A stretch of DNA of 64,000 nt, from contig NW_004797486.1 in NCBI RefSeq assembly GCF_000002075.1, positions 867,806 to 931,805 of the forward strand. The letters run 5' to 3'. The translations under genes were made by a program, and so were the position numbers. Under the pieces are notes generated by a model. It made no database searches and was not told the origin of the DNA. It worked only from the letters and a program-made list of their open reading frames with translations. Origin of the DNA: Aplysia californica. Lineage: Eukaryota. Shown one piece after another: positions 2,857 to 45,084 of the stretch. Positions within the stretch are counted from its first letter, which is position 1. Each line of letters opens with the position of its first letter.

Positions 2857-2858
<2 letters not shown>

Positions 2859-2924
<66 letters not shown>
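2859..2924. repeat. (GA)n microsatellite
   Basis: direct. Confidence 0.95.
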
Positions 2925-2927
<3 letters not shown>

Positions 2928-14809: not shown

Positions 14810-14842
14810 ATGTCTTGGCAGCAAAACAGGGGCCCTGGGAGG
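14810..14842 (+). CDS. coding exon 1 (MSWQQNRGPGR); exon begins at the acceptor before 14770
   Basis: tttacag acceptor ends 14769; AAAATGT start context; AGG|gtgaga donor, phase 0. The frame is open upstream within the exon, so an earlier start cannot be excluded. Confidence 0.6.
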
Positions 14843-17800: not shown

Positions 17801-20800
17801 GAAACAGCAAAGCCTTCCTGTGACAGCCCAGGCCTTAGAAGAACGGATCAACATGTACATAAGTGCAATGGACAAAGCTGCTGCACTGAACAACCTGCAG
17901 CAATCCTCACAGCTCCAGCGAGACATACAAGTAAGATGTGTTTAGGAAATCTACTTGTGTGTGCCGACTGTGCACTTTTTGACTCGTTTAGAAGAGGCCT
18001 TTTCTCTTTGCATTGACTGTTCTCCTGCTCTCGTCGAAAATATTAATGAGGCTTTTGGCTTGATGTAGTTATGTGGCTGATGAGTTATTATCGTCTTATT
18101 GTAAAACAACATGTATAGGGTACCCAAGTTGAAAGTCAATATGTATCCATGAAGCTTGCAGATGGAAAGCAAGGGAAATGTAGCTTCCTACGATGCCTTT
18201 CATGAGACAGTGATAGATGAGGATGCCTTTATTAATAGAAGACAAGTGTTTATGCTAGGGAAGTTGTGTTAGAATTCATGTCCGACTGTGCCTATTAGGA
18301 CACCATGTTATATTACTTAACACTTTGCCGCCTCATCTCGCCGATTGACGATGTTTCCCACCCAGTTTCTTTGGAATTTCCCCGAAATATGACAGTAAAG
18401 TGTTAATGGCCTTGCTATTTATAAAGCCTCCTTATGTAAAACAAAAAGCAGGCTGTTTGATGATAGCCCATGAACTGCTGGATCAATAATAACAGCATGT
18501 AAATCAGAGCTTCATGAACTTTTTCATTGGCTGATAGAAGTATGCTCTAGCTTTCATGACAGGTATTCAAGACAAAAGAAAATGCTGAAAATGTCTCTTA
18601 ATTTATTTTTTTGTATTTTTTTGAAATATGAGAAAAAAAGTGACCTAAGTTTTACATTTTTTTCTCTCAGTTGCTAGTGGATCTCATGGAGAGGGTCAGC
18701 GCTGGTCAGGCTGTTTGTGAAGCAGAAGTCCCTCCACCCCTTGATATAACACCTCAGAATGGTGAGTGGGTTGTTTTTTTTCTCCCTTCTCTAGGAGATA
18801 TTGGCTAATGTTTTAAGACATCTTCGTCTTGTTCTTGATGTTGTCATGATTTGTAAGTTAATTTAGACTATAATGATAATATGATAATTGATTGCATTTA
18901 TATTGTATGGAATCCCACTGGAAAGTAGGCTCTTTATGATTTACAAGTTATTGTTACCTGGAGCAGACAGTTTGACTTTTAGAAATATTTACAGATTTGT
19001 AGGAAACATTCAGTTAGGGTGCCATTTTACTAACAGACAAGATAAAACACATTATCTCCTGAGTAAATGGGCTTTTACTGATTTGAAATAAGTTTATGAG
19101 AAGCTGAGATGTAAGCATGATAATAAGTTAGTAATTCCCCCTAACCCTGTTCTGAGAAATCTGGGTTTGGAGTTCGAATTGATGTTTAAAAATCATTAAA
19201 AAAACAACAAATTTCTAATTGTTTTTCAAGCATATTATTTTAAGAATTTAAATAAGATAGATGTTCAAGTTTTTCATAGTGCACAGGACTCATTTTTTAG
19301 AATAGAATAAACCTTTTCACTTTATTGGATATCTCTACTTCAAAGCCAGCGACATCTTACTGATTTTCCTGTGGTGCCTCACACATGACCCTTTGCCAAT
19401 AGGCCGGGGTTTCTTCAAAAACCTTACAAAATGTGGTGGATGAATAAACTTGGTTAAAAAAGAGAAAGATTATTCTTTTTTATATCGGTTGCCGGGCCAG
19501 GTGCTGGTTAAACTACAAGTGAATATGTTGGAATTGCATTTTGTCAAGCGCTGATTTTTATTTTTTCTTATAAGGACTTATCATCAATAGTTATTGTCAT
19601 ATTTCTACTTTTTAGCCAGCAAACCAAATCCTTTCTTAAAATTTTTTTTAGCACTGTTCTTTGTGTATGTTCATCGCTCATGCCTTTTTTCTTTCTCTCT
19701 CTTTGTCGTTTATGTCTTTTTTTGTTTTCTCCTTAGTTATTTATTATTGGCACCATGATAGAGTCTTCCTTTAACGAATGACATAACAGTCTTTTTTTCC
19801 TGTGCCTATTTGTACCCAATTGATGCCATCTCTTTCATAAGTGTTGCAGAGGAAGATTCCAACAAATCATGTATTTTGTCATATGGTCTTTACTGTGTAA
19901 GTCTGCGTCTCTTTTGAATGACAAAGTTGCACACTTTGTGGGTGGTTGGCGGGTGCTCTGGTGTGCTTTGCTCCTTCTTTCCTATGAAACATCTATTTTC
20001 CTGATCTCTCCTTGTAACACCTCTAATCTTCGGCACTTATATGACCTAATTGTGTTGCAAGTGCAGTAAAACACTTATTAAAACTAAAAGTTGCACACTT
20101 TTGCCGATAGTTTTATGAAGTGTTTTCTGCTTTATTCTACTTACACGGCTCTCCAGTTATTCAGCTACTATAAAACATGATTTTTACAGATATTCTAGCT
20201 AACCCACTGGGTGAGCTGTCATCTAGAATGAGTGAATACCACAAGGCCCTCTACTTTGCTGAGGAAGAGCTGTCAGATCAGAGGATCAACAAAATAAAAG
20301 ACTTTCAGAGAGGATTGCACGTATGATTATTATTTGTGTTACTGTAGAGATATCAGCTCAGTACCTGTAGATGTTAAATGAAAATCAGATGTCTTTGGTG
20401 AGTGTGATCATACCAAACACTTGCGATGAATTTTTAAAATCTGAAATGTATTTTATCTTAACTTTAGTTGTTGTTCGTAGCTATCACAAGATGGCCAACG
20501 ACAAGTAATTTTTTTCATTTGCTTGTGGCATATTCCTTTTCTCTGACCTTACTTGACACAGAAGATTGTCTCATTTGGGGCATGTGTGTTAAATTTTTTT
20601 CAGTTTCTTTTTTGATTGATACCTTTGGTTCTTTCCAAACACACACTTTGGTTTCTCGGCACTTATATGACCTTATTGTGTTGCAAGTGCCGTAAAACTC
20701 TTTACTAAACTAAACACTTTGGTTTCTCGGCACTTATATGACCTAATTGTGTTGCAAGTGCCGTAAAACTCTTTACTAAACTAAACACTTTGGTTTCTCG

Positions 20801-23800
20801 TCACTTATATGACCTTATTGTGTTGCAAGTGCCGTAAAACTCTTTACTAAACTAAACACTTTGGTTTCTCGGCACTTATATGACCTAATTGTGTTGCAAG
20901 TGCCGTAAAACTCTTTACTAAACTAAACACTTTGGTTTCTCGGCACTTATATGACCTAATTGTGTTGCAAGTGCCGTAAAACTCTTTACTAAACTAAACA
21001 CTTTGGTTTCTCGGCACTTATATGACCTTATTGTGTTGCAAGTGCCGTAAAACTCTTTACTAAACTAAACACTTTGGTTTCTCGTCACTTATATGACCTT
21101 ATTGTGTTGCAAGTGCCGTAAAACTCTTTACTAAACTAAACACTTTGGTTTCTCGGCACTTATATGACCTAATTGTGTTGCAAGTGCCGTAAAACTCTTT
21201 ACTAAACTAAACACTTTGGTTTCTCGTCACTTATATGACCTTATTGTGTTGCAAGTGCCGTAAAACTCTTTACTAAACTAAACACTTTGGTTTCTGCCAA
21301 ATATTCTGAATGCCAGGAGACTAATAGAGCAGGTTCTGAAGCAGACTGTGTTGTCAGGCAGATTTCAAGGAATGCAACTTAGTTCTTAGCAGTTTGCTTC
21401 CCTTTACCTTCTATGTCTATTTTGTGATGAAATATATCCTGCTGGTGACACTGACTCAGGAGGGAAGAAAGAGATTGTTGTTTTTTATTTTTTATATTTT
21501 TTAGGGGGGTTGTAAAAAAATGAATATGTGTCACGATGCGGTGGAATTGGGGGCTTGTCAATTTTTGGGCATATAGAGTTATTGATGTCACCTTAATGCC
21601 TGTTCATTTGCTTCGCTTATCGCGGACCAAAAAATGCAAAAAATCACGACCCTGACAAACGCAGATGCTGGGTAAGTGTTTTACAGGGCTCGCAACTACG
21701 TAAGGTCATATGAGCGTGCGGGACACTCCAAATATTTTCAGTTGGTAGGAAATTTTGCCCGGGTGGTGGCCGAAGCCTACTCTAATCGATTTTGGACCAC
21801 CTAGGGATCTTTAACTTGCGGATCTTGCACTGGGGACCTCCGAGATTTTTGGCCCTTGTCTGAGAAGGCTAGGTATAGATCTTTCCTACCAGAAGATCAG
21901 GGGTATGGCTGAAAGACAGCAGTAAGAAGAAGCCAAGGAGTAGCAGTAGAAAAGCTGCAGAAAGAGTCAGGAGCCAATAGGAGGGGGAAAAGGAGGTGAG
22001 GGGGGTGGGAGTAGAAAGTGGAGATGAAAACAGACGACAGAACATTGCTAGAGAGCAGGAAAGAGTGTGCAATAGACTATGATAGAGAAGAAAAATTTTC
22101 GTGGCTATCCGGGTTCGAACTGAACCCAGGACCTATTGAATGAGAGGTGAACACCTTAACCTCCAGGCCACGAGAGCACCCCTTGGAACTCTATGGAACA
22201 GAACAAATGGTAACATTGCCTAAATGAAGGAAAGAGTGACCAGTGGAGGGGCCAGCTTTTTTATAATAGTCAGTTGCTTTGTCTGCTTATGAAGAACAAG
22301 CTATTGAACCATCTGACACTTGACCATGGACCTGCTTGGCAAGGCTCATGTAGTTTGCAAAAGAATGCTCTGTCTAACTGTGTATGTAGTGTGCACATTT
22401 CATTGCCCACTAAGCTACATCATCTCCACTTCCTTCACTCCAACCCCTTTTTCTACCAGCTTCCATTTCTTTTATTTAATATGACCCGTTATTTGTTGTG
22501 GCATGACATCACTTTGTTACTTATTTACCCCCTCTTATCTCCCCCACACTCCCATTACTGTGTTTTAGGGAACTTCATAACTTTGTAGAGTTTGTACTGG
22601 CCATGAAGAGTCACTTTGTATGCACAAAGTAAGGTAAAGCTGAATGCTTAGCGAAGTTTATTGCCCTAAGCTGAAAGTGGGCTCGTGGGCAGATTTTTAT
22701 TTTTATTAAAGATAGATTACTATTATAGAGAAAAAAAGTTCCATCACATAGTGAAAGCGGGCTCTTAGTTTAGGCACACAAGGTTCTTATGCTGCATGAT
22801 CTTAGGCAGAGATCAGTGTACTTGTTTACTTTTTCAGTTGATGCACAGTTTACAGAAGAGGGCTCAGGATGGTTTTCCTATCAGAGCAGATGAGATCCCG
22901 CCTTCTGTTGTCATTCCCAGTGATGATGGTAGGTACTGGTGATGGGTAGTTTCACTGAAAGTGCCTCCCTCTTCTATTCTGTTAACATATTCCTATTACT
23001 TTTTCAGCACCTATAATGTTTTACCATATTTTGCACCTAATTCATGGAATCAGAATAACTGATTGGATGGGCTCAGCTTCAAGTTGTATTTTATTTCCCA
23101 TTTTTATCCTTAGTCATCACATGAACTCTTTTGTTAAATAAATTGCATACCATACTCATTTTCACAGAAAAAAGATTGTATTTGCAGTTTTCGCTTACTG
23201 CCTCTTTTGGCGGCCTCTTTCAAGGCTACTACAAGGAGATGAAGTCGAAAACCCTTCAAAGTGGCTTTGTTTTCCAAAATGATATGCTCTACTGTTCTTT
23301 GGAGTGTAAATGGTAAAAGTGCATTCAAAGTCTTGATAAACATTTCCAATGCTAAAAGATGTTGCTGAAGAGCCATATTGCATTCTACTTGACCAAAACT
23401 TGCCAAGAGTGTATACATTAGCTGAATTCGACCTCATTTAATTCCTTTTGTGGCAGAAAAATTTTCTCCCTTATTTTTAAATATTTCTGACTCTGTATTT
23501 GGAACTTTTGTATGCTGTTGTATCAAGAATATTGGTATCCTTCACATTTAAGAATGATAAAGAGAGGAAGGCTGAAAAGTACTGGTAGGAGGGTCCTAAA
23601 TTCAGACTTTAAGGAGATAGAATACATCTTGACAGAAGTGGAGACTATAACCTAGGGTAGAAGTAGATAGAAGAGCTCTTAGATTATCCTATTTATCATG
23701 ATGAAAATTTTAATCAAATTTGAAATAAGTGAAGAGGAGATGCCTACTTCACTATGAGCTGCCTTTTCCCTGTTTAAACATTTTTTTTTTTCATCTGTAG

Positions 23801-26800
23801 AATTTGACAATGATGCTGTGAACACCTTAAATGGGAGGATCTCTCAGTACAAGGCTGTCTTGGCTTCTGCTCAGAATGGACAAGAAGGTGATCGGAGGAA
23901 AGTGCCCAAGATCCTGAGCGGATTACGGGTAAATGCCATTTTTAAACTGAAAAAGAGTTAGATATAATTGATTTTCTGCACTGTAGTATTCTGGGTACTG
24001 GTTGTGGAAATGAGGTGAAACAGCCAGTAGAGCTAAAATAGTCCACATGCTTATTTTATTTTTAGAACATAGGCTGTTTTGTGCTCCTGCCAATATCAGC
24101 AAACAACCGGCATCTGTGGTGTAGCGGTTAGATGCTTCACATTTGCTCTCCGGAGACCTGAGTTCGATTCAGGCATAGGGGATAATTTTTATCAGGTATG
24201 TTCATCTTCCTGGTGGGATCCAACAATCTCTGTCAACTGCGGATCATCTATATGGCATGGAGACTTTTGTACCTAAAACCTTTATTGAAGGAGGTCACCT
24301 GATTGCCATCTTTTCCTGCCTTGAAAAAGCGTTTTACTCAACTCAGAAGTACAATATTCTAAAAGACCTTAGTTCCATTGGCTTCCATTGTTATCTCTCT
24401 GCCTTGTTGGCAACTTTCTACAAAACTGTTCTTTGAAGGTTTATGTGGGATCTTGTTTCTTTTAGATCCTCACCAGCAGGAGGAAAGTGTTCCCCGGGGA
24501 AGCATCCTTTCTCCTCTCCTCTTTGAAATTACAGGCCCTCCAAAACAACATAGACAGCCTGATATATGTTGATGACTTTCTGATATGTTGCTGATTTAAA
24601 AATTCTCAAATAAGATCCCTGGAAAAACAGCTGCGCAGCTGTTCAAACTTGAAAAGTGGCCACGTGAAAATAATTTCAAAATGCCTGGCAGTGCGTTTTT
24701 GACATGTGTCACGACGCGGTGGAATCAGGTGCTCATCAATTTTTGGGTATTTGGAGTTATTGGGATCATCTTAAAGCTTGTTCATTTGTTGTGCTTCTGA
24801 TAAAAAAAATATCCATTTATTGTGGATACAAGTTGAGATATGGCGATTGAAGGAGGTGGTGGTCGCCTGGTTTCAGAGGTAAAATTAGTGAAAAAATGGC
24901 GGCCAAAGTTTAGTTATTTCCTTATCTTGAGAGTCAGTGGAAACTGAAAATTTAGATTTTTGGTCCTTTTAATCAATGTTTTCCAATAAAATCCACACAG
25001 AAATGTGTTTTTTAATGGGCATGAAAGGTGTTGAGCCCAAAAAAAAATTTTGATAAAAATTCCCAAACCTTCAAAAAAATGCCAGTTTCTTCACTTTCAT
25101 TAATACGACGAGCGCCTAATTTCACCACGCTGACTCACATATATATTTATACTCACTTTTAATATCTTGGAGGTCTTAGACATAGTATGTCAACAATGCT
25201 CTCTGTCAACACATAATAGTCTTTATACTGTATTGGCCTGTATTTTATGCCCAATGTTTTTGTTGTTTTTAAAAGCTTAGCCGATTAGGCCAATGTTTGC
25301 CACAAATACTGCTTGCAGTGAATGCCAGGAAAATATTGATGCTCAACCCTCTGTTGCTTTATCTATTGTCTTGTCAGATATTGCTGTTGCTGCTGCATCC
25401 TACTCTTTCATCTTGAAAATGGTTCACATTGGTTGTGGATACATCTACCTTGCCCCCCCTCCCCCGTGGGCAGTGCTACTGACTGAAGTTGTCTTTAGAC
25501 CATTCCCAAAGGGTGGATATTAACATGTCCTTATGCACAGTAGAATTGTATATTGGCTGATTTATCAATGTCATGCTCATACTGGGCCGGAACAACATAA
25601 TGGGAACTGCTGCTTTTTCTTTCCTCATCCTTACTTTTTCCTCTATTTCTTTTGTATGTTTATCACTCTCTTGTGAACTGCTATTTCCGGGGTGCCTTGA
25701 AAGTGGAAGCAGACTTTGTGCTGTTGAGGCTAGAGAGGTGGGCAGAGTAAGCGTGATTCCACGTTTGGACTACTCTGTTGACATCTACCCCTTGGAGATC
25801 ATATGACCTTATGCAGTTGTGAGCGCTGTAAAACCTTACTAAAACTAAAAATATCTGTCTTGGAAACACTGTATATTTTAATAGAAGTTGATTTTTTTGT
25901 CTCATTCCATTCCCTAGTCTTACATTACGTCTTTTGGAAGCCTTCTTAATGATGAAGGTATTCTAGTGGTCTGATCCTTCATAGTGTGTTCAGTGACAGT
26001 ACATTTGGAACTCATGAGTGTTCCTGTATGTCTGTCACTCTTTATAATTTTATGTTTCTATCTTGGGAAAAAGTTAATAAAGTAAATGTGAATGACAAAT
26101 CTTTTTCAGACTTTGGAATTTTTGATGACAAGAGCTAAAGCAAGAAGACCTGTGTGGAAAAGAGACATTCCTCCAGAATTTGATTACTATGGAGGAGAGG
26201 GAGGTAGGTGGTTTTCTTAGTAGCACCTTTTACATGATGAGATAATTTTTCAAAATTTAATTCAAATTTTTAGTTTAAAAAATCACATAATGGCTTAGTA
26301 TTTTCCACCCACGCAGCGTGCAGGGCGCACAGCCTTTGTCCCCATGTACCAGGATACAGTTAGGCTACATCAGTACTATACCTGTATTTCGGCAAAAATA
26401 CCCCAATCATTTTGAAATTTTCAGCACATTGAGAAAATTGAATGTGATGATCGTACGTTCTCCAAAAAAGGAAATTAAAATCAGAACTGAAAAAACATGA
26501 TGATCGTATGTTGACCAAAAAAGGAAATTGGAATCAGAACTGAAAACTTTTCATCTAGCACATACGTTACCCGAATTCTCATCATGGCATCAGTGTAAAG
26601 CAGCACTCATGCCAGGTCTACTTGATATTTTTCATTAAAATGTACTCCAATTGTTATAAACAAACTAATTTTCACCCTCAAAGGCACACAAACAATTCAG
26701 AAAGGAAATTATAACTTAAACAAGTGTGCATGCCTCAAAGGAGGTCATCCCTACAACATATTTGTTGCTATATCGTGCCGTCGCAGACCGGCGTCCCGTG

Positions 26801-35800: not shown

Positions 35801-38800
35801 CCTTCTTTTTTATGTTTGTTACTCTCTTGTAACACCTCTAATCTTCTGGTGCTCATATGACCTTATGCAGTTACGAGCGCCGTAAAATCTCTACTAGAAA
35901 AAAAAAAAAGATGATAATTTAAAAAACCCATTCTATTACAATAATAAATTTGATCCCCTTTGGAAATTTGTTTTACAAAGGCATACACAAACACACAAAT
36001 ACGTTCTTTCAAAGATGCATGAATAATTCTCAGTATCACATATATTGACAGTCCACCCATCATTTCTGGTCGCCACTCTACAGCACCGTTTTAGAAATAA
36101 GAGTTAACGTATGTTCCCCAAGGACATACCCCAGAGACTGCCTTTGTGAATGCTATGTCACCGACACAAACTTGCCCTGTTTGTGCAGCTTTGAATCAAA
36201 ACAGAAAAGTGGACGCTCATATTTTAAAAAAGTGAATTTGGAAAGCTGGGGTTCTGATTTGGAGTATTCTTAATTCTATACTGATATACAGCAATGGAAA
36301 CTTTCAATTCTATAGATTTTTTAATGCTCAAAATCATGAAAATCCAGCTTTGTCATGCTCTTACAAATATTGGCTGCTGCCTTTGTATAGATTCTGAGCT
36401 CTGAAGAGTCTGTGGTTTCTTCTTAAAAGTGACACAAAGGTTGGCGTCGCCAGAATTGTTTATATATACATTCTTTTTTATTTTTTGGTATGTATATTTG
36501 TAAAGTCTAAAAATTACACATCTTGTGTGTGGGTGGTTGACAGGTGCTCTGGTGTGGTTTGCTCCTTCTTTCCTATCAAACATCTATCATCCTTATCTCT
36601 ACTCCTTCTTTTTTGTGTTTGTTTCTCTCTTGTAACACCTCTAATCTTCGGCACTTATATGACCTTAGTGTGTTGCAAGTGCCGTAAAACTCTTACTAAA
36701 ACAAAACATCTTGTGTCTGTGTTTGGTGGGCCCTGTGTCTTCTTCAATTATTTTCAGTGTTTTTGTTGTCCCAATCTGTTCCAAATAGAAGTTGACTGGT
36801 CATACTGACTAACCACCAGCTACCTCTCAACTGCTTGCCACATGCTTTTTTCAATTTCTTACGAGAAATAATGAGAAAGATTTTCTGCTACTGTGGCTCA
36901 TCCATATCCCTAGTACGTCGAAACACTTAATCATTTTTCTGAGACGCTGGTTAAGCTTACAAGTTGAATTCAACACATTAAACTTTAATAATTAGTTGTT
37001 GAAACAATCAAGACTTACCTGTAAGTTGATGATTGTATGTTTCTGATTTTGACGATATGTCATCGGGAATGGAGTGGCAATATATGGGATGTGCGCTAAC
37101 CGATCCAGTCACTCTTCAGCCAGTCACAGTAGATATGAGCATGCAAATAGTGTTATAGTACAACTGTGGCATGCACAATATAATATGATATTGTTATATA
37201 GCAATATAAATGAACTAAGCTTTGTATGTCATACATATTGGGAGCGATTAAGGGAGGGCATATTACCACTCCATTCTTGACTACAGATTCTCAAAATCAG
37301 AAACAATCATCAACTTATAGGTAAGTCTCGATTATTTCTATAATTTTAACTCAACTGCTGGTCAGGCCCTCTGTAGTAATATGGGATTTCAAAGCCTGAC
37401 TCCCTTGATAATCATTGTCAGGAGGGCAGAACAGGTCCTCTATTATCTTGCCATCTGATAACAGATTTCCAGTCTCCTCAAGGTTTGAATGAAATGCTTA
37501 GGTGGTCTCAGTCACATTTCTTGTCCATTTCTCGCTGCTTTTGTGTTAGCGCTTCTTTTTGCGCTTTGGAATGGGGGACTCACAAGAAATAGAAACAGAC
37601 TTTTTCCTTTTCCTTTTATTTTTGCACCCATTGACCTCAGCAATTATTCAGTCGCCTCCATATTTCTTTTAAGGACATCTTTCATAAAAATCATTGTCTT
37701 GCTGAACAAAGGAGGGAAATTTCATATTTTTGTTCACTGCGTCGGCTTGTGGAAGGTTCAGTAACAATCTTTGCTTCCGCAAAAATCTCATCCCCATCCA
37801 AATAGGGATCGTGTACAGACACAATGTGTTCTATTTCCATCATGATTTGTGATTGGAATCGAAACCGATAAAATAAAGGTTTAGAAGTTTTGGAAACTCT
37901 TCTTGAGCAACTTTGTGGCAATGTTTTATGTTCACTACATGTGTATTATTTCATGTGCTGAAAAAACATTTTTTCGTGGTAAATGTGTATACTTATGGCA
38001 TGACTTCTGCTGAGTCAGTTTATTTCTCTTGAACTCAAGTTGAGAAGTTGAAGAGCTGCAGAGGTGATGGGAATCTTCTCAGCGCTGGGTTTCATAAAAT
38101 CCCTTGTCTGAGTTCGTAATAGGCTGCCATCTGAGTTGCATAGCTAAGTGCATTTGGGATACTGATCCACCTGCTTTCGTTATAACTGAAATTCCGGTAC
38201 TTTTGGTTCTATTGGTATTTAGAGACTAGCATGTAGTAACCCATACAGTAATTCAACAAATAACAAATTATCCAATGGGGACTTTGCAAAATGTTTTTGT
38301 TTGTTACAGGGTGACTCTCAGATGTCTGGAAAACCTCAAGTATGATTTTCTCTTGGCAGAGACAAAGGCAAGTAAAGTATAGTTTTGAATGGAAAGAAAA
38401 AAAGCATTGCTCTTTAGAAAAATGATACATTGTCGTAGTTTAAAGAACAAGTCAAGTGAGGTTTTTTTTGGTGGGTTTTTTTAGCTTGTCTCTTAATAAT
38501 GAAATCTATACTCGAACCTGGGGTCTCTTGTGGTTTAGAGGTTTGGTGTTAGCCTCTCATTCAATAGGTCTCGGGATCCAGACTTGACAGTGACTGAAAA
38601 TTTTCTTCTCTAAAATATTTTCTCTTTTCACCTTACTTGCTCTCTAATTATATGCTGTCATCTGCTTTTGTCCTCACATTCTGCCTCCTTCATTCCCCTT
38701 CCCCCCTTGTTCCTTCCTCTGAGCTCTGGACTCTTTCTGCTGCCTTTCTGCTGCTGCTCCTTGGCTTCTTATTTCATGCTTTCTTTTAGTCACACCCCTG

Positions 38801-41800
38801 ATTTTAGGGTTGGTAAAATCTAACACCTAGCCTTCTCGGATAAGGACGAAAAAATCTCAGAGGTCTCATGCGCAAGCGGCACACCTTAACTCTTTATCGC
38901 CGAGGGGGGGTAAACCCACTACGCCGGGGTCCTTTTTTGGTGCTAAGTCTAAAACGTCATTAAATGGGTCTTTAAATCGGAACTAGCAAACTTATTTTGA
39001 AAGTTCTTCATCTAATGAATGAACTTCTGGTATTTTGCTGAAAAATAATTTGATGTCGAAGTGGTCTTAAAGGAATGTGCCCGAACCGCTGTCAGCGGCT
39101 CACCGGCACAGGGGTTCCGATTGCGAGCCGCTTGCCGGAGATATAAAGAGTTAAAGATCCCTTGGTAGTCCTAAAATCAATAAGAGTAAGCTTTGGCTGC
39201 CACGCGGGCAAAATTCAAAATTAATTCACACCAAAACTGAAAATGCTTAATGTATCCTGCATGCTCATTTGAACTTATGCCGATGCGAGCATCGTAAAAC
39301 ACTTACAAAAAAAAAAAACAATGAAAAATCCCTAGACTCAAATGTGGTTGATGTATGAAGAGGGATGGCGATGTAGGATGGATTTTGTGTCTTGTGAGTG
39401 ATCGGGATATGATTTACAGATGTGATAAAGTCATTCCAGTTTGCTGTATGGGTTTTCTTTACTTCCAAACATCTCAACTCTGGGCCTAGAGAAAAAAGAA
39501 AGCAGAATTAGAAAAAAAGGGCAAAAAAACAAAATTAGTTTCAAATACTTCGTTTTAAGCTTCTGGTTTTGAGCCAGACACAAGTTACTTTTTGTTTTGT
39601 TTCTTTTAGAATGACACTCTTGTTACTGAATGGTTTTTGTTGTTATTGTTTATCCATTCTTCCATCCATCATTGTGTATCCCCAACCATCCATTCACTGT
39701 CAACATTACTAGATGTGAGTAGGCCATTTTGAAGGCAGAACACTTGACTTGGTGGAAATGTTAAAGAAAAAGCTAGAAGTACATGCACCATACATCTTTA
39801 TTTGATGAGTATGGATGTTCATGGACCCACCCGGGGCAGTGCCACTGACTGAAGTGTCTTTAGGCCATTCCCAAAGGGGGGGAACATCTCGTTCAAGCAT
39901 AGTAGAATTGTAAATGGGCTGACTCATGTCACGCTCATAACTGTGCTTGATCTACAACAGGGAACTGCTGCTTTTTCTTTCCTGATCCTTACTATTGTCA
40001 TTTTCCTCTACTTCTTTTGTATATTTGTCACTCCCTTGTGACCTGCTATTTTGGGGTGCCTTGATAGTTGAAGCAGACCTTGTGCTGTTGAAGCTAGAGA
40101 GGGGAGCAGTCTAAGTCTGATTCCCTGTAAAGACTTCTCTGTTGACACCCACCCCTTGGTGCTCATATGACCTTATGCAGTTGCCAGTGCCGTAAAACCC
40201 TCTACTATTAAAAAAAAAAAAAAGAGAATGTTCATGTACACTTTTCTTTTGTGGGTTGACCTCTTTCAAGTGTGCCGTTATTAAGGGCATAGTAGGGTCT
40301 TTACACACTTACAAAAGTTAAAACATTTTAAGGGTTTGTGCTAAGCTTCCTTGGTGATGGAAGGGATTTTTTAGTTATTGCACTTTCTGTCTATAATTTA
40401 TTGTGAGGTTTTTATAATGTTTAAAATTTTATTTTTTCGCTTTTTGCAGAGTTCAAGTGTCGAGGCAGAGCAATTGAGAGATCAAATGAGCAAGATTAAG
40501 AGGAAACTGCGGAACGGAGGCAGACAAACATGGGATGGTAAATTGTTTGACACATTTGTTTCAGTCTGGCAGATTATTAATTCAGACCCTGTAAATTTTT
40601 TTTGGGACATAAAAATGGTAAAATCCTTACAATGTGGTTTTGCTGTAACTTGATATTGATGCAGCTCTTTCTTGGCACTTTTCAGATTTCACGTGTTTCT
40701 GATTTGTAAGCTCTCCTTAGCACAGGATACTTTACTGTTACATTGCAAAGGGTTCAATTCCTTTGTTTCTTTGCAATAGTAGTCTAATTTGACTGAGGCC
40801 TATTTTTGGGGAAAAATGTTCTGCGGTGACTGAATTTTATTCAAATTTTACCCTGCATTAGCTGGACGGTAGGGAGTGCAACTGGTAGATCCTCTCCTGT
40901 TCTCTTTTTACCTCTGCCTGAGATGATTAATTCCTCTATATTGTCTACCTTCTTGGCCTATGTCTCAGGGTTAACAAACTTCTTTAGGTTCTTTATCTCT
41001 AACCCACTGTGGTACTAGTTTTTGTGTATTCTGGGCGATTTTTGTTTTTCAGGTTAGGATGCCCCTTGTCTGTGTGGCAGCCGCTTGCTCATTTTCACAA
41101 AAATGGTTGGAGGGTGCTATGGTAGCTCCTTTGTCTTTATTTTATTAAACCAACTTGTGCTTGTTTTAACTTGAACAAACCAGTATGATTTTTCTAAGGC
41201 TGCTCCTCACTTTTGTGTCTCCGGTCTTCTATTATCTATTTGTGGTGGCCGAATTTTGCTATTCAAAAGGCTTTTTAATGGCTGCATCGATCGACATGCG
41301 GTTTTTGCCAAAAGATTCTTAAAAATATTCTCCAGAGCATGACGCCCTTGTTTTTTTCACTTTTGAGACAGTTTTGCTGCAAAAAACAAAATTTCTTTAT
41401 TTCGCCGATCGCTTTTGTAGGCCAACGCTTCTGTCTCTGTAATTTTAGAAAATCCAGAAGTGATATTTCGTGAGGCGCATTTTGTTTTGAGAGTATAGAT
41501 CTAGACCTTATAATTTTTTGCGTCTCTCAAGATTTATTGCCCCATTCCAGTAGAGTGTAAATATGGTAGGCCAATGACTTTTAGTTGATATTAAAGCACC
41601 GATCATTCCTTTCATGGAAAGGGGGCCCAGCTAGTCCTCTTATACAGTAAATTCTCCTTACTTCCATGCCCTCAGTGTATAAGCATTGTGTCCAGTCGGA
41701 ACTTGCATCCACGGAGAGGAAGATGGAGGAGATGAGATGTGCCCAGCAATGGGATGAGGTGCAGTTGTTATCCCAGAAGAAGACGCTGGCTGAGAGAGAG

Positions 41801-44800
41801 GTAGGTTGGATGTCGCAGAAAAGTACAGTCCAATATAATGGTTTGTATGTAATGTCATTTTCAACATTGGAAGGCAATTTAAGAGCACAGGCCTCCAAGT
41901 TTAATGCATGGCTTTGATAAGACTGAGTTCAGAGGGTGCTGAAGATTGGTAACAACTTCTCTACCAACCCAAGATTTGAACCAGATCACAGCACCACAGT
42001 CCACTATGCTAACAAATCGGAAGCACTGCTGGTTGTGTGTTCATGAGGATTGTCAAGCAATGTCAGGAATGACATCCTTTGATGAGTGACCACTGGGGTG
42101 TGCCCTATTGCTAGATATGTTAATTACATCCAAGTAGATACTTTGGTGCAGACTCTATTCCTGCAGAGGTCTATGCTTTTGGTGGAGACTATTATCTAGT
42201 TGAGGCACTGACAGAACAGTTCTGTCAAATGTGGGAATATGGAAGTATTCCTCATGGGCAAAGCTTTGCAGTCACCTTGGTGATTTGTCGTTGATCCCGA
42301 TATTTTCAAACCAAATACCGATTTTTTTCCCCCCTGGGATCGTGATTTTTAGATTTCATGGAGTGGCAGGTCTGTCAGTACGGATATGACATGAGGATTC
42401 TACGGCTGCAGGATAAGGCCGTGGTGCAAAAAACTGATGCTAAAATTTGATAAAATAAGTGGAAGTGGTGTTTGAAGGCTTTACACACACACACACTAGC
42501 AATGCCAATTGGGCTTTCCCGCGAGGCGAAAATTTGGTCCCCGTTTACGGGCGATTTTGCGGACCCGGCCGAAGCGTAGGTGACTAACTTTGTCAACCTC
42601 GGTCTGCTCTATTTCCGAACCAATCCGAATGAAACTCGGCTACCAATCAGAAAATAGGGCAAACTAATGATATGTGGACGTTGAAGTTCGTACACATAAA
42701 TTAAACCTATACTTTTGGTGTCGGGAACACTTTCGTATCGTGTACACCGAAAACTATAAGGAGTTTGAATTTCAACGCCCAGATGGTAATAGATCTATCT
42801 ATCCTCTATAGTGTGCTCAAATTTGAGAGTTCTGTGTCAAGTAGTTGTTTAGACCCGATCGTAAATCTACGACTACCCCCCTATCCAAAGCGGCTTCGCA
42901 CGGAGACCGGCCATTTTCCCCTCACTCCCGTGGCAAATGTCTGTGACCTACAATCCCCGCATGACTATTCCGGGCCCGTTCATTGGTCACTTGAAATAGG
43001 GCAATGGCGGGCGCGCGCATCCGGTTGTTTTTCTCTCTATTCCCCTGTAACATCGCAATGGGGGTATTCCGAGGCGAGGTTATCTCGTCTCGGGGTGTTC
43101 GCGTCTCAACGGGGAAAAATAATTTTTAATTGTACGGCATGCTAGATTGAATTAACTTATCTTTTACGGTTGGCATGGTCTAAAGTCATCATAAAAAGCT
43201 TTGCAATTATTTAGTCACGCTGCCCACATATATTCTTAAAGATCCCATGTTGTGATACGATGCTATAAATAAAATGGACTCATCCCGACACCCCTTTTTC
43301 ACAAAATCGTAATATGTACACCACAATTTTAATTATAACAAAATAACTACGAAATTGGTAGTAAATCTGACTGCAGAAATGATTTCTACACTCAAAAACA
43401 CATCGGGTAGCCAAGTTTCTCTCGAACATTTGGATTAGTTACCGAGATATCGTCGATTTTCTTACAGAATCTGCTACTGCGTGGTCCACTTTTTAGGAGT
43501 ATTTTCCTATATATGGGTCATCCATATTTTGCTGACCTTTACAACCCCATAACTTTTTTATTTATGAACCGTTTCTCAAAATTCAAGAAGCATAATTATC
43601 AGAATTGAAAATTCTTTCTTAGGTACCAAAAAAAAGGGGGCAAAAGTGAAAATTTNNNNNNNNNNNNNNNNNNNNNNNNNNNNNNNNNNNNNNNNNNNNN
43701 NNNNNNNNNNNNNNNNNNNNNNNNNNNNNNNNNNNNNNNNNNNNNNNNNNNNNNNNNNNNNNNNNNNNNNNNNNNNNNNNNNNNNNNNNNNNNNNNNNNN
43801 NNNNNNNNNNNNNNNNNNNNNNNNNNNNNNNNNNNNNNNNNNNNNNNNNNNNNNNNNNNNNNNNNNNNNNNNNNNNNNNNNNNNNNNNNNNNNNNNNNNN
43901 NNNNNNNNNNNNNNNNNNNNNNNNNNNNNNNNNNNNNNNNNNNNNNNNNNNNNNNNNNNNNNNNNNNNNNNTTTTTCTAAATATAATTACCCAATATCAC
44001 GAAAAACAAGCCCCGCTCAATTGTAACTACATGTTCAGGGGCAACAGTCTTCTTTTTTTCCCCTTCTTTGTCTTTGTACTTCCTGATTTTAGGTCAAAAT
44101 ACCTGAAATTGACCTTGAATTTACCTGAAATGGGAATTTTGAGGTAGGCAGCCCTCTGGCAGGGTTCCATATCATTATACCTGGCCAAGGTGATTGAATA
44201 TCCCTCTGAAAATCTTTGCGCTCTTTCGAGTTGAACCTGGCTGACCTCCCTTGAACTTTGTTGTTGTTTGCCCAATGGAATTACTTAATTGCCTTAAGTT
44301 TAATAAAAGATTATCATATCTGAAAAGAGGAAAAAAAAATCGGAACACATATGTGTCAATTTCATTTTATTTCTCAAGATCATTATTTTAGAGAAAAATG
44401 GCATCAATTTGAGAGGAAATCGAGGCTTTTCCCTGCTCTCACACACTTTTTCTGTGCTCAAATCGGGATTGTCGTAGTACCTGGTCTTGGCTAAAAGGAT
44501 GTTATGCTCCTGGGCAATGGCACAACCAATTAACTTGTTGTATGGGAAGAGAAGTACTGTGTAGAGAAGCTGTCTAAAAGATCTTAAAAAAATCTAGGTT
44601 TCTATAGATTATAGGCAAAAGACTGATATTTATTCCCACTTTGAATTTCACTGACGATACAGCAGTTTTGATCTGTTTGAAGTCAAAAATAATTTTTTTT
44701 AAAATCACTGCATTTCAGTTTTTTTTGTTTCGTTGCATGTGACCCATTATTGGATATTTATCTGTGTAAACAGGAGCTGTTACTTATAGTTTAATACAAT

Positions 44801-45084
44801 TACACTCACTTGTTGTTGCTGGAACTACTGGAAAAAGCTGTGTCGATTCTCAAGTCTTTTTTTCCCACTACTGGAAATGAGAGGAAGTCTTGAATACTAA
44901 ATGGTTGGCAGAAGGGAATATGCTTTGCTTTGCAAGTATTTACTGCATGACAGTAAATAATGTTTTTCCTAGGAAGCAAAGATTTTTATTAGCCCTAGAT
45001 CACATTCACCTTTGTTGTGACTGTTTCGTTTTTCTTTTCCAGCTTGCCGTGTTGCGAGTCCGACTTCCAGAGCTGAATTACTGA
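14810..45084 (+). CDS. CC2D1-like: Whole gene model: DM14-repeat protein of the CC2D1/Lgd family lacking the C2 domain; 17 coding exons, 1198 aa
   Basis: Exons 14810-14842, 17808-17930, 18671-18761, 20190-20320, 22838-22928, 23801-23928, 26110-26203, 27108-27235, 28361-28478, 29634-29800, 30931-30987, 31967-32041, 33164-35211, 38310-38367, 40450-40537, 41676-41800 and 45043-45084 join in frame with AG acceptors and GT/GC donors. The total is 3597 nt, ending in TGA. The translation shows four DM14 motifs and a CC2D1-like C-terminus. Confidence 0.85.
15566..15790 (+). mobile_element. tRNA-derived SINE (family 4) nested in the LINE; related head at 24106-24180
   Basis: A-box tggtgtagtag, B-box gttcgattcc, 3' hairpin gcgcctca…tgggggcgt, A-rich tail. 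Confidence 0.65.
16400..16602 (-). mobile_element. family 1 SINE 5' fragment
   Basis: Reverse complement of the family 1 head (accacgagagcccc). Confidence 0.7.
17808..17930 (+). CDS. exon 2, DM14 repeat 1 first half (QSLPVTAQALEERINMYISAMDKAAALNNLQQSSQLQRDIQ)
   Basis: aaacag acceptor, CAA|gtaaga donor, phase 0-0; LEERxxMYxxA DM14 start. Confidence 0.85.
18671..18761 (+). CDS. exon 3, DM14 repeat 1 second half (LLVDLMERVSAGQAVCEAEVPPPLDITPQN)
   Basis: tttctctcag acceptor, G|gtgagt donor, phase 0-1; GxxVxExEVPPP DM14 end. Confidence 0.9.
19938..20086 (+). mobile_element. short retroposon family 2 (tail type alpha), 15-bp TSD
   Basis: Starts GTGGGTGGTTGGCGGG; TSD aaagttgcacacttt. Confidence 0.8.
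20190..20320 (+). CDS. exon 4, DM14 repeat 2 first half (DILANPLGELSSRMSEYHKALYFAEEELSDQRINKIKDFQRGLH)
   Basis: tttttacag acceptor, CAC|gtatga donor, phase 1-0. Confidence 0.85.
20643..21295 (+). repeat. tandem array: 9 x 71 bp + 14 bp, unit = TSD + retroposon 3' tail
   Basis: Unit acactttggtttctcggcacttatatgacct(t/a)attgtgttgcaagtgccgtaaaactctttactaaactaa, starting at 20643, 20714 … 21282. Confidence 0.95.
21672..22180 (-). mobile_element. family 1 Deu/Nin-type SINE, full length
   Basis: Head, central domain and tail all present. Confidence 0.85.
22838..22928 (+). CDS. exon 5, DM14 repeat 2 second half (LMHSLQKRAQDGFPIRADEIPPSVVIPSDD)
   Basis: ttttcag acceptor, G|gtaggt donor, phase 0-1; 91 nt like exon 3; GxPIxxDEIPP motif. 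Confidence 0.9.
23801..23928 (+). CDS. exon 6, DM14 repeat 3 first half (EFDNDAVNTLNGRISQYKAVLASAQNGQEGDRRKVPKILSGLR)
   Basis: poly-T...ctgtag acceptor, CGG|gtaaat donor, phase 1-0. Confidence 0.88.
24240..24670 (+). mobile_element. LINE reverse-transcriptase fragment (I/Nimb-like)
   Basis: QEESVPRGSILSPLLF followed, after a frameshift, by YVDDFLIC. Confidence 0.7.
24705..25139. mobile_element. ~435-bp MITE family M (TGTG… termini, several copies TA-flanked)
   Basis: Imperfect TIRs; copies at 45653-48478 (interrupted), 48481-48916, 50797-51196, 58390-58813, 58817-59123, and a fragment near 21526. Confidence 0.8.
25453..25850 (+). mobile_element. short retroposon family 3 (tail type beta); second copy 39824-40222
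   Basis: Shared body ggcagtgc(c/t)actgactgaag…gggaactgctgctttttc and shared tail catatgaccttatgcagttg…gtaaaac. Confidence 0.75.
26110..26203 (+). CDS. exon 7, DM14 repeat 3 second half (TLEFLMTRAKARRPVWKRDIPPEFDYYGGEG)
   Basis: ctttttcag acceptor, G|gtaggt donor, phase 0-1; GLR|TLE...DIPPE matches the DM14-1 pattern. Confidence 0.9.
27108..27235 (+). CDS. exon 8, helical insert part 1 (AQDYDKSINKAKIVLQVRSLLARCSKVHIKNKEKHQSFQSLLQ), GC donor
   Basis: ttcatcag acceptor; CAG|gcaagt donor (an alternative in-frame GT lies at 27242). The exon is needed to bridge phase 1 (exon 7) to phase 0 (exon 9). Confidence 0.75.
27290..28260 (-). mobile_element. degraded Tc1/mariner-superfamily transposase relic
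   Basis: Minus strand reads WFSNLAHSY…G…N (WFSDEAHF-like) and FSFCNKEGDTQIVTADCYLNVM (GPFFF…TV…YLxML-like); many stops. Confidence 0.45.
28361..28478 (+). CDS. exon 9, helical insert part 2 (SLRDMDKALTSNPSHGELKKIHSSLMKLKMDVDGVEKFS)
   Basis: ttttttccag acceptor, G|gtactg donor, phase 0-1. Confidence 0.8.
28871..29375 (-). mobile_element. family 1 Deu/Nin-type SINE, full length
   Basis: Head, central domain and tail present. Confidence 0.85.
29634..29800 (+). CDS. exon 10, even-type DM14 first part (…LALIDARIGEYKTAALNAKRDNQVEHAIKHFKVLK)
   Basis: ctacccag acceptor, AAA|gtgagt donor; RxxEYKxAALxAK is the DM14-2/4 signature. Confidence 0.92.
30931..30987 (+). CDS. exon 11 (GLQSLKEQLGREIDVDMTL)
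   Basis: attttcag acceptor, CTT|gtgagt donor, phase 0-0; continues DM14 (VDxx motif). Confidence 0.85.
31069..31882. mobile_element. Tigger/pogo-like MITE
   Basis: TIR CAGTGGAACTC(G/T)GATT(T/C)AAC at both ends; the same terminus occurs near 4190-4208. Confidence 0.7.
31967..32041 (+). CDS. exon 12 (VPPPPPVFTPVNESQPPLPSARDGP)
   Basis: ttttgctcag acceptor, CCG|gtgaga donor; completes the DM14 VDxxxxPPPP ending. Confidence 0.88.
33164..35211 (+). CDS. exon 13, 2048-nt exon encoding ~682 aa of Ser/Glu/Pro-rich low-complexity, probably disordered sequence
   Basis: Lies within ORF 33101-35215 (704 aa, the only long ORF in the window); ttgcttttcag acceptor in frame; GA|gtaagt donor, phase 0-2. 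Confidence 0.88.
35301..35505. repeat. ~50-bp T-rich minisatellite, 4 copies
   Basis: tttctgcttttagcatgttttcttcatgtcaatctttgtattttt repeated. Confidence 0.9.
35723..35906 (+). mobile_element. short retroposon family 2 (tail type beta)
   Basis: TSD aaagatgataa. Confidence 0.8.
36529..36705 (+). mobile_element. short retroposon family 2 (tail type alpha)
   Basis: TSD acatcttgtgt. Confidence 0.8.
37001..37338. mobile_element. foldback element with ~50-bp inverted termini
   Basis: gaaacaatcaagacttacctgtaagttgatgattg…tttctgattttga mirrored at ~37291-37338. Confidence 0.65.
38310..38367 (+). CDS. exon 14 (EVTLRCLENLKYDFLLAETK), GC donor
   Basis: tttgttacag acceptor, AAG|gcaagt donor; the only phase 2-to-0 bridge I found; resembles the 'SLxVLxFD/YE' start of the CC2D1 C-terminal domain. 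Confidence 0.75.
38520..39320 (+). mobile_element. family 1 SINE interrupted by a TTAA MITE
   Basis: The SINE resumes at ttaaagatcccttgg after the insertion. Confidence 0.8.
38890..39150. mobile_element. piggyBac-like MITE, TTAA TSD
   Basis: TTAA|CTCTTTAT … ATAAAGAG|TTAA, inserted in the TTAA of the SINE central domain. Confidence 0.8.
39824..40222 (+). mobile_element. short retroposon family 3
   Basis: TSD-like atgttcatg on both sides; A-tail. Confidence 0.75.
40450..40537 (+). CDS. exon 15 (SSSVEAEQLRDQMSKIKRKLRNGGRQTWD)
   Basis: tttttgcag acceptor, G|gtaaat donor; LxxGG motif of the CC2D1 C-terminus. Confidence 0.85.
41676..41800 (+). CDS. exon 16 (VYKHCVQSELASTERKMEEMRCAQQWDEVQLLSQKKTLAERE)
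   Basis: ccctcag acceptor, GAG|gtaggt donor; LxxKKxLAExE matches the CC2D1 terminal helix. Confidence 0.88.
45043..45084 (+). CDS. exon 17, terminal (LAVLRVRLPELNY*)
   Basis: Long polypyrimidine tract ending ttttccag, phase 0, TGA stop; parallels the short LxxLR ending of CC2D1 proteins. Confidence 0.78.
   Translation, partial: LAVLRVRLPELNY

What the first reader, a model, noticed from the sequence alone, without database searches (positions are those of the whole stretch)
14810..45084. C2-less CC2D1/Lgd-family gene: candidate rewired ESCRT-III regulator
Seen: a 17-exon, 1198-aa open frame with architecture [DM14 odd x3]-[helical insert]-[DM14 even]-[~680-aa acidic low-complexity region]-[CC2D1-like C-terminal helices]. 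Established: CC2D1A/B and Drosophila Lgd carry four alternating DM14 repeats plus a C2 domain, and DM14 repeats bind the ESCRT-III subunit CHMP4/Shrub and control its polymerisation. Here the usual N-terminal leader, DM14-3, DM14-4 and C2 are missing, while the post-C2 tail is retained. Inference: this is a lineage-specific paralogue that could act as a scaffold or decoy for ESCRT-III without C2-mediated membrane targeting. I do not know of this architecture, but I could not search for it.
Basis: partly seen in the sequence, partly recalled or inferred. Interest (0 to 1): 0.85.

Follow-up and report, generated by a model that had tools for sequence, protein, structure and literature searches.

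The report
Gastropod C2-less CC2D1/Lgd paralogue
This is a real, expressed sea-hare gene, conserved across snails and slugs, that arose as a tandem copy of the ESCRT-III regulator CC2D1/Lgd and then lost the membrane-binding C2 domain and the residues that normally hold CHMP4, so it probably does a new job.

Summary
The 17 exons at 14810-45084 (+) reproduce exactly the 1198-aa public Aplysia californica protein 'uncharacterized LOC101854088 isoform X2'. The N gap (43656-43971) lies in the last intron. Orthologues read straight across that exon 16/17 join.

Pfam finds DM14 (99.5 bits, four stretches) and no C2. A profile of the canonical linker, C2 and tail finds no C2 exon in any frame of the 64-kb window, yet it finds all of them in the canonical CC2D1 gene on another scaffold.

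- **Repeat units:** there are five two-exon hairpin units. Units 1-3 are all DM14-1 type, unit 4 is a decayed even-type DM14, and unit 5 is even type.
- **Rest of the protein:** a 682-aa acidic, serine-rich disordered exon follows, then a four-helix tail homologous to the canonical C-terminus.
- **Distribution:** orthologues without C2 occur only in heterobranch and caenogastropod snails.
- **Origin:** in Plakobranchus the gene sits 8.75 kb downstream of canonical CC2D1 on the same strand, so it arose by tandem duplication.

The KARRxxR motif needed for Shrub/CHMP4 binding is intact in canonical DM14-1 and DM14-3 but lost in all three odd-type units. I read the gene as a neofunctionalised soluble scaffold: a new variant of a known kind, of moderate interest.

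The scan had noted the DM14-1 triplication on this same stretch, not on other DNA.

The parts
14810..14842 (+). Exon 1: start codon and first 11 residues (MSW...). There is no long N-terminal leader.
   Evidence: Exact map of P0001. The MSW start is shared by the Elysia, Physella and Lymnaea orthologues.
17808..18761 (+). Unit 1 (exons 2-3: 17808-17930 and 18671-18761; aa 12-82). DM14-1-type hairpin, acidic, with KARRxxR replaced by QSSQLQR.
   Evidence: 47 bits to the DM14-1 profile against 22 or less for the others. Motif and charge. Helices 18-37 and 41-62.
20190..22928 (+). Unit 2 (exons 4-5: 20190-20320 and 22838-22928; aa 83-156). DM14-1-type hairpin and the most conserved part of the protein. 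Motif KIKDFQR in Aplysia (KIQxLQR in most orthologues).
   Evidence: 42 bits to DM14-1. Invariant columns N87-E109. Motif.
23801..26203 (+). Unit 3 (exons 6-7: 23801-23928 and 26110-26203; aa 157-230). DM14-1-type hairpin, strongly basic, with motif positions KVPKILS and a conserved block TRAKAxRPVWK.
   Evidence: 37 bits to DM14-1. Net charge +6.7. Conserved block aa 196-222.
27108..28478 (+). Unit 4 (exons 8-9: 27108-27235 and 28361-28478; aa 231-312). Intron 8 has a GC donor.
   Evidence: About 0 bits in heterobranchs, but 18-30 bits as DM14 in Babylonia, Batillaria and Nucella. Hairpin 240-256 and 262-283 at pLDDT above 90.
29634..30987 (+). Unit 5 (exons 10-11: 29634-29800 and 30931-30987; aa 313-387). 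Even-type DM14, closer to DM14-2 than to DM14-4.
   Evidence: 55 bits to DM14-2 and 49 bits to DM14-4. PDB 9vhm_A (CC2D1A) matches aa 333-393.
31967..32041 (+). Exon 12: proline-rich linker that follows unit 5.
   Evidence: Conserved VPPPP block.
33164..35211 (+). Exon 13: 682-aa acidic, Ser-rich disordered region. It has three conserved islands: aa 432-450 (33221-33277, short helix), aa 640-653 RKTLDSVGFLSCQN (33845-33886) and aa 900-907 FQDLMESM (34625-34648).
   Evidence: Composition and islands. pLDDT about 30, with short helices at 436-449 and 897-906. Held by small runs, some shown to be transcript-derived.
38310..41800 (+). Exons 14-16 (38310-38367, 40450-40537, 41676-41800): most of the C-terminal four-helix tail. 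Intron 14 has a GC donor.
   Evidence: The tail profile hits the extreme C-terminus of canonical CC2D1 proteins at 15-36 bits, colinear. A spliced contig joins 35211 through exon 14 to 40450. pLDDT 91-97.
43656..43971 (.). Assembly gap (N run) inside the last intron. It is not in the coding sequence of this model.
   Evidence: Orthologues are contiguous across the exon 16/17 join.
45043..45084 (+). Exon 17: last 13 residues and the stop codon (…RLPELNY*).
   Evidence: The C-terminal ...RLPELxY is conserved in Bradybaena, Candidula, Lymnaea and Babylonia.

Best explanation
LOC101854088 is a functional, gastropod-specific paralogue of the ESCRT-III regulator CC2D1/Lgd. It arose by head-to-tail tandem duplication of the canonical gene before caenogastropods and heterobranchs split.

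The copy then changed in these ways:
- it triplicated the two-exon DM14-1 module;
- it kept one or two even-type DM14s;
- it lost the N-terminal leader, DM14-3 and the C2 domain;
- it gained a roughly 680-aa acidic disordered exon;
- it kept the C-terminal helical tail.

All three odd-type hairpins have lost the KARRxxR patch that docks Shrub/CHMP4, and there is no lipid-binding C2. I therefore infer that it no longer works as a canonical CHMP4 chaperone. It most likely acts as a soluble multivalent scaffold. Its partners would be recruited by the new, strongly conserved hairpin surfaces (unit 2 helix 1, and the basic end of unit 3) and by three conserved short motifs in the disordered region.

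The gene, its architecture, origin, conservation and expression are shown here. The loss of CHMP4 binding and the scaffold role are inferred.
For: Gene model and domains:
- Exact 17-exon model equal to the public protein.
- DM14 present and C2 absent in Pfam.
- No C2 exon in any frame of the window. The same profile finds the canonical C550 exons at 22-74 bits.
- Canonical gene with C2 lies elsewhere in the genome.

Conservation and distribution:
- C2-less orthologues at 45-57% identity over the first 412 aa in eight heterobranchs, plus Babylonia, Batillaria and Nucella.
- Among 1.84 billion representatives, nothing outside gastropods scores above canonical level.

Unit identities and origin:
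- Units 1-3 score as DM14-1, and units 1-3 plus canonical DM14-1 form one group in a unit tree (support 0.81 and 0.905).
- The intron inside each DM14 has the same position and phase in both genes.
- Plakobranchus has canonical followed by paralogue, 8.75 kb apart on the same strand. The Nucella gene model fuses the two.

Motif, fold and expression:
- KARRxxR is lost in units 1-3 but intact in canonical units. The motif is essential according to PMC11275157.
- Tail homology.
- AF2 model: five hairpins and the tail at pLDDT above 90, with the disordered region near 30. One hairpin superposes on Lgd DM14-3 (5vny) at 1.6 Å.
- A spliced transcript contig with exon-only depth in run X3.
Against: - No binding or localisation data exist.
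- Unit 3 keeps a basic surface (net charge +6.7, with the cluster shifted two residues), so it might still contact the acidic face of a CHMP protein.
- The two polyA RNA runs that were laid had essentially no reads on exons 13-15, so expression is low or restricted.
- Transcript evidence here covers only the junctions 13/14/15.
- The conserved disordered-region motifs have no assigned partner.
- In this Aplysia assembly the two genes lie on different scaffolds. The tandem origin therefore rests on Plakobranchus and Nucella.
Confidence: 0.6

Rival explanations
1. One reading: the protein still binds CHMP4/ESCRT-III through its DM14 hairpins and acts as a cytosolic decoy or buffer that cannot be targeted to membranes by a C2 domain.
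For: - Its origin is in the DM14 family, and the hairpin fold is retained.
- The three odd-type units could give multivalency.
- Unit 3 is strongly basic.
- DM14s are also reported to bind CHMP2 and CHMP7 (PMC11275157 introduction).
Against: - KARRxxR is absent from every odd-type unit in every orthologue.
- Unit 1 is acidic (net -4.8) and unit 2 is neutral.
- In Lgd, single Ala changes in this motif abolish onDM14 function and Arg-to-Lys changes weaken it. C. elegans DM14-3, with a decayed motif, is non-functional.
Confidence: 0.25
2. It modulates canonical CC2D1 by pairing with it through the shared C-terminal helical tail. It would then act as a regulator or dominant-negative partner and have no partners of its own.
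For: The tail is the only non-DM14 part retained. It is homologous to the canonical C-terminus and is very well conserved, scoring 130-157 bits among full-length orthologues. The region after C2 is needed for Lgd stability.
Against: - There is no evidence that the canonical tail mediates oligomerisation.
- In Lgd the extreme C-terminus packs within the same molecule, beside the C2 domain.
- The strongest conservation is in units 2-3, not in the tail.
Confidence: 0.1
3. It is an artefact or a dying gene: a mis-annotated model whose C2 exons are hidden in the assembly gap or in introns, or a pseudogene.
For: A 316-N gap lies inside the locus. Two polyA runs show almost no reads on exons 13-15.
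Against: - The gap is intronic, and orthologues are contiguous across the join.
- There is no C2 signal in six frames of the window or of the 86-kb Babylonia locus.
- The canonical C2 region spans several exons over more than 8 kb, far more than the gap.
- The frame is intact, with conserved hairpins, motifs and tail across gastropods.
- A spliced transcript contig exists.
Confidence: 0.03

Closest known systems
Lgd / CC2D1A / CC2D1B (LGD/CC2D1 family, ESCRT-III regulators)
   Same: - DM14 helical hairpins recognised by Pfam PF21528.
- The same intron position and phase inside each DM14.
- A homologous C-terminal tail.
- A position next to the canonical gene in Plakobranchus.
   Different: - No C2 domain and no roughly 135-aa N-terminal leader.
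- Repeat order is 1-1-1-(even)-even, not 1-2-3-4, and DM14-3 is absent.
- KARRxxR is lost from all odd-type units.
- A 682-aa acidic disordered exon lies between the repeats and the tail.
C. elegans Lgd (LGD-1)
   Same: It is a precedent for decay of the KARRxxR motif in an odd-numbered DM14 (KMKMNMR in DM14-3), with loss of that domain's function (PMC11275157).
   Different: The nematode protein keeps one intact odd DM14 and the C2 domain, and it is the sole orthologue. Here every odd-type unit has lost the motif, and an intact canonical gene is also present in the genome.
[quoted passage not shown]
   Same: The same architecture, colinear over the whole length and without C2.
   Different: These carry only automatic names, some of which wrongly imply a C2 domain. 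I found no paper that describes them.

Membership tests
LGD/CC2D1 family | DM14 repeats (the family-defining domain) | tested here: met
   PF21528 at 99.5 bits with four stretches on P0001. One hairpin superposes on the Lgd DM14-3 crystal structure 5vny at 1.6 Å.
LGD/CC2D1 family | Four DM14s in the order 1-2-3-4, alternating odd and even | tested here: not met
   Position-specific profiles built from 29 canonical proteins show units 1-3 as DM14-1, unit 4 as a decayed even type and unit 5 as even type. No unit is DM14-3-like.
LGD/CC2D1 family | C2 domain C-terminal to the DM14 repeats | tested here: not met
   No PF00168 in P0001 or in the heterobranch orthologues. No C2 exon in six frames of the window, with a positive control on C550.
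LGD/CC2D1 family | KARRxxR basic motif in the odd-numbered DM14s (the Shrub/CHMP4 contact) | tested here: not met
   Unit 1 is QSSQLQR, unit 2 is KIQxLQR and unit 3 is [RK][IV]PKIQS. Canonical units have the motif in 29 of 29 cases.
LGD/CC2D1 family | Long N-terminal region before DM14-1 | tested here: not met
   Unit 1 starts at residue 20. Canonical DM14-1 starts at residues 72-257.
LGD/CC2D1 family | Conserved C-terminal region after the C2 domain | tested here: met
   The tail profile matches the last 80 or so residues of canonical proteins, colinear, at 15-36 bits.
LGD/CC2D1 family | Common descent from the canonical gene | tested here: met
   Shared phase-0 intron inside each DM14. Tandem position in Plakobranchus. 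The clade nests among lophotrochozoan canonical sequences, at low resolution.
LGD/CC2D1 family | Physical binding to CHMP4/Shrub and positive regulation of ESCRT-III | not testable with these tools
   No complex prediction or assay is available here. Motif loss argues against the canonical binding mode.

The most novel reading that the evidence does not exclude
The DM14 hairpin, so far known only as a CHMP-binding module of Lgd/CC2D1, has been re-purposed in gastropods for a partner outside the canonical CHMP4 interface. One possible form is self-association or hetero-association between the acidic unit 1 and the basic unit 3, in the manner of ESCRT-III electrostatic polymerisation. The result would be a new, hitherto undescribed soluble scaffold that is present in the neurobiology model Aplysia.
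Probability: 0.35. Interest if true: 0.6.

Novelty: new variant of a known kind. Interest (0 to 1): 0.45.

Why it matters
The literature describes Lgd/CC2D1 proteins as always having four DM14s plus a C2 domain, with the odd-numbered DM14s docking CHMP4 through KARRxxR. Here a paralogue has been conserved since before the caenogastropod-heterobranch split, a deep divergence. It has removed the C2 domain, the N-terminal leader, DM14-3 and every KARRxxR motif, yet it keeps the hairpins and the tail under clear constraint.

This shows which parts of the fold are kept for reasons other than CHMP4 binding. It also gives testable material for what even-type DM14s and the C-terminal tail do, which is still unclear in flies and mammals.

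The work corrects misleading automatic names ('C2 domain-containing protein 1A') in several mollusc genomes. It also flags a fused gene model in Nucella.

Tried and rejected
- **Exon-by-exon Pfam:** this gave only a 14-bit half-match on exon 2, because an intron splits each DM14. A whole-genome six-frame DM14 scan did not flag the window for the same reason.
- **Joined model:** I did not build or submit a joined translation of my own. The only full-length sequence searched is the public protein P0001, which a script showed to equal the 17 exons.
- **Contig look-ups:** The look-up of encoding contigs has no record for P0001 or for Nucella P0010.
- **Babylonia locus:** the gene plus 10 kb on each side shows no canonical neighbour. 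Adjacency was shown in Plakobranchus instead.
- **Whole-model Foldseek against the PDB:** uninformative apart from 5vny, because the model is long, repetitive and helical.
- **ML tree of concatenated DM14-1, even DM14 and tail (222 columns):** it places the clade among lophotrochozoan canonical sequences. However, it groups the clade with the long Trichoplax branch, so I treat it as low-resolution.
- **Unit 5, DM14-2 versus DM14-4:** profiles favour DM14-2 by about 6 bits. The unit tree does not resolve the question.
- **polyA raw runs X22 and X23:** almost no reads on exons 13-15.
- **Pseudogene and hidden-C2 readings:** rejected (see the rival explanations).
Full report
**Identity and gene model**

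The window is Aplysia californica scaffold C216:867806-931805. The long open exon at 33101-35212 matches, at 100% identity, a 1198-aa public protein, 'uncharacterized protein LOC101854088 isoform X2' (P0001).

A script walked P0001 along the window and demanded exact translation and splice signals. It recovers 17 exons:

| Exon | Coordinates |
|---|---|
| 1 | 14810-14842 |
| 2 | 17808-17930 |
| 3 | 18671-18761 |
| 4 | 20190-20320 |
| 5 | 22838-22928 |
| 6 | 23801-23928 |
| 7 | 26110-26203 |
| 8 | 27108-27235 |
| 9 | 28361-28478 |
| 10 | 29634-29800 |
| 11 | 30931-30987 |
| 12 | 31967-32041 |
| 13 | 33164-35211 |
| 14 | 38310-38367 |
| 15 | 40450-40537 |
| 16 | 41676-41800 |
| 17 | 45043-45084 |

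All acceptors are AG. Fourteen donors are GT, and two (after exons 8 and 14) are GC followed by AAGT, the usual form of genuine GC-AG introns.

I did not submit a joined translation of my own. The full-length searches used the database protein id.

**The gap**

The N run 43656-43971 lies inside the last intron (41801-45042). Exon 16 ends in phase 0 and exon 17 begins in phase 0.

Seven orthologues from independent genome annotations carry the residues around the join (…AER|EL…) contiguously. They end in the same …RLPELxY motif with no insertion. The coding sequence of this model therefore does not depend on the gap.

**Domains**

Single exons give no significant Pfam DM14 hit; the best is 14.4 bits on exon 2. 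The reason is that each DM14 is split by an intron. On P0001, Pfam gives PF21528 at 99.5 bits (E 1.1e-28) in four stretches, and no C2.

I built a general DM14 profile and four position-specific profiles (DM14-1 to DM14-4) from 29 canonical CC2D1 proteins that each have four clear repeats. Scoring the five two-exon units of the protein against them gave the following:

| Unit | Residues | Best match | Score |
|---|---|---|---|
| 1 | 12-82 | DM14-1 | 47 bits (22 or less for other types) |
| 2 | 83-156 | DM14-1 | 42 bits (22 or less for other types) |
| 3 | 157-230 | DM14-1 | 37 bits (22 or less for other types) |
| 4 | 231-312 | none in heterobranchs | about 0 bits |
| 5 | 313-395 | even type | 55 bits to DM14-2, 49 bits to DM14-4 |

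This pattern holds in all orthologues.

Unit 4 is still found as a DM14 in Babylonia, Nucella and Batillaria (30, 25 and 18 bits), and it is even type in Babylonia. AlphaFold2 predicts it as a hairpin at pLDDT above 90.

In a tree of all units, each of units 1, 2 and 3 is monophyletic across species (support 0.92-0.99). Together they form one group (0.81), and with canonical DM14-1 they form a group without intruders (0.905). This means the triplication happened in the paralogue and before caenogastropods and heterobranchs split.

**Absence of C2**

I built a 396-position profile of the canonical region after DM14-4 (linker, C2 and tail) and searched it against every stop-free segment of the whole window on both strands.

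- It finds nothing for the C2 part.
- The only window hits are weak, colinear matches of exons 16 and 15 to the tail part.
- As a control, the same search finds the canonical Aplysia exons on C550 at 22-74 bits.

The canonical gene covers residues 16-903 of a bivalve CC2D1, including C2, at C550:221842-272556. The 86-kb Babylonia locus of the orthologue also has no C2 exon.

**Tail**

A profile of the last 106 or so residues, built from the orthologues, hits the extreme C-terminus of canonical full-length CC2D1 proteins. Examples are residues 940-1022 of 1024, 883-962 of 963 and 961-1040 of 1041, at 15-36 bits and always colinear. AlphaFold2 predicts four helices there at pLDDT 91-97.

**Disordered exon**

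Residues 413-1094 are 17% serine with net charge -56 and have pLDDT near 30. Three islands are conserved across orthologues:
- aa 432-450, a short helix;
- aa 640-653 (RKTLDSVGFLSCQN);
- aa 900-907 (FQDLMESM), preceded by acidic residues and predicted helical.

**Distribution and origin**

A word-indexed search and a full HMMER scan of 1.84 billion representatives find strong relatives only in gastropods:
- Heterobranchs: Bradybaena, Candidula, two Elysia species, Plakobranchus, Physella, Lymnaea, Bulinus and Biomphalaria.
- Caenogastropods: Babylonia, Batillaria and Nucella.

All intact, unfused models (Nucella's is a fusion, discussed below) have DM14 and no C2. Canonical CC2D1 proteins of bivalves, Octopus, Lottia, nemerteans and others score 72 bits or less, mainly on unit 5.

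The intron inside each DM14 sits at the same position and in phase 0 in the canonical gene (…RGLK|TL…, …RIVK|QY…) and in the paralogue (…RDIQ|LL…). The copy therefore arose by DNA duplication and is not a retrocopy.

In Plakobranchus the canonical gene and the paralogue lie head to tail on one contig, 8.75 kb apart. The Nucella model P0010 is a fusion of a canonical half (with C2 at 493-607) and the paralogue (657-1311). Both point to a tandem duplication. In this Aplysia assembly the two genes are on different scaffolds.

A concatenated ML tree puts the clade among lophotrochozoan canonical sequences, but with poor resolution.

**Expression**

Eighteen runs from five studies hold half or more of the sampled words of the 2-kb exon. 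Many of them have only 50-140 million letters, too few to assemble a 927-Mb genome, which implies transcript origin.

I laid reads on 35100-41000:
- Run X3 has depth on exons only. It contains a 1170-nt contig that runs from exon 13 (ending at 35211), through exactly the length of exon 14, into exon 15 (40450-40537), and then 768 nt further. This confirms junctions 13/14/15, including the GC donor, and shows no extra exon between them.
- Two polyA raw-read runs had essentially no reads on these exons, so expression is low or tissue-restricted.

**Mechanism**

Published work on Lgd shows that:
- the odd-numbered DM14s bind the acidic face of Shrub/CHMP4 through the KARRxxR motif;
- single alanine changes abolish function, and even Arg-to-Lys changes weaken it;
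- the C. elegans DM14-3, with a decayed motif, is non-functional (PMC11275157).

The C2 domain binds phospholipids in vitro (PMC7754597).

In 29 canonical proteins the motif positions are K/R, R, R and R in nearly every DM14-1 and DM14-3. Aplysia's own canonical gene has SKQRRLDR and SKARRMGR. The paralogue differs:

| Unit | Motif positions | Mean net charge |
|---|---|---|
| 1 | QSSQLQR | -4.8 |
| 2 | KIQxLQR | about 0 |
| 3 | [RK][IV]PKIQS, with the basic cluster shifted two residues | +6.7 |

For comparison, canonical DM14-1 has a mean net charge of +3.3.

The strongest conservation lies elsewhere:
- helix 1 of unit 2;
- the linkers GFPIRADEIPP;
- the end of unit 3 (LEFLMTRAKAxRPVWK).

I therefore infer a soluble scaffold that has left the canonical CHMP4-docking mode. 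The decoy idea stays as the main rival, chiefly because of the basic unit 3.

**Novelty**

I found no paper on a C2-less gastropod CC2D1 paralogue. The literature describes the family as four DM14s plus a C2 domain. The gene is annotated but uncharacterised, and it is mislabelled in some genomes. I rate it a new variant of a known kind, of moderate interest.

Noticed in passing
window 35691-35887, 36479-36872, 39828-40221 (introns 13 and 14): Interspersed repeats with read depth far above the surrounding sequence in both RNA and DNA runs. Many reads continue into A or T runs, and many variant positions are present. They look like a very abundant SINE-like family, and related copies appear to be scattered through other introns.
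   Followed up: no
window 15890-16800 (intron 1): Decayed retroelement fragment: a CCHC zinc-knuckle-like ORF, and an ORF with a weak RNase H match (PF00075, E 0.003).
   Followed up: partly
window 27235/27236 and 38367/38368: Two GC-AG introns (donor GCAAGT) in one gene. The second is confirmed by a spliced transcript contig.
   Followed up: yes
P0010 (Nucella lapillus, 1311 aa): The public gene model fuses canonical CC2D1 (C2 at 493-607) with the C2-less paralogue (657-1311). This is most likely an annotation merge of tandem neighbours.
   Followed up: partly
L021/L022 (Plakobranchus contig BLXT01002484.1): The canonical CC2D1 gene is split into several gene models (384 aa, 224 aa and 674 aa) directly upstream of the paralogue. 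[quoted passage not shown]
   Followed up: partly
window 2721-3059: A GA-rich microsatellite that reads as a run of ER repeats in one frame. In addition, nine N gaps are spread over the window.
   Followed up: no
runs X10-X14 (organism B): Small runs from a second, closely related species hold 55-62% of the sampled words of the big exon. A near-identical orthologue is therefore probably present, and probably transcribed, in that species.
   Followed up: no
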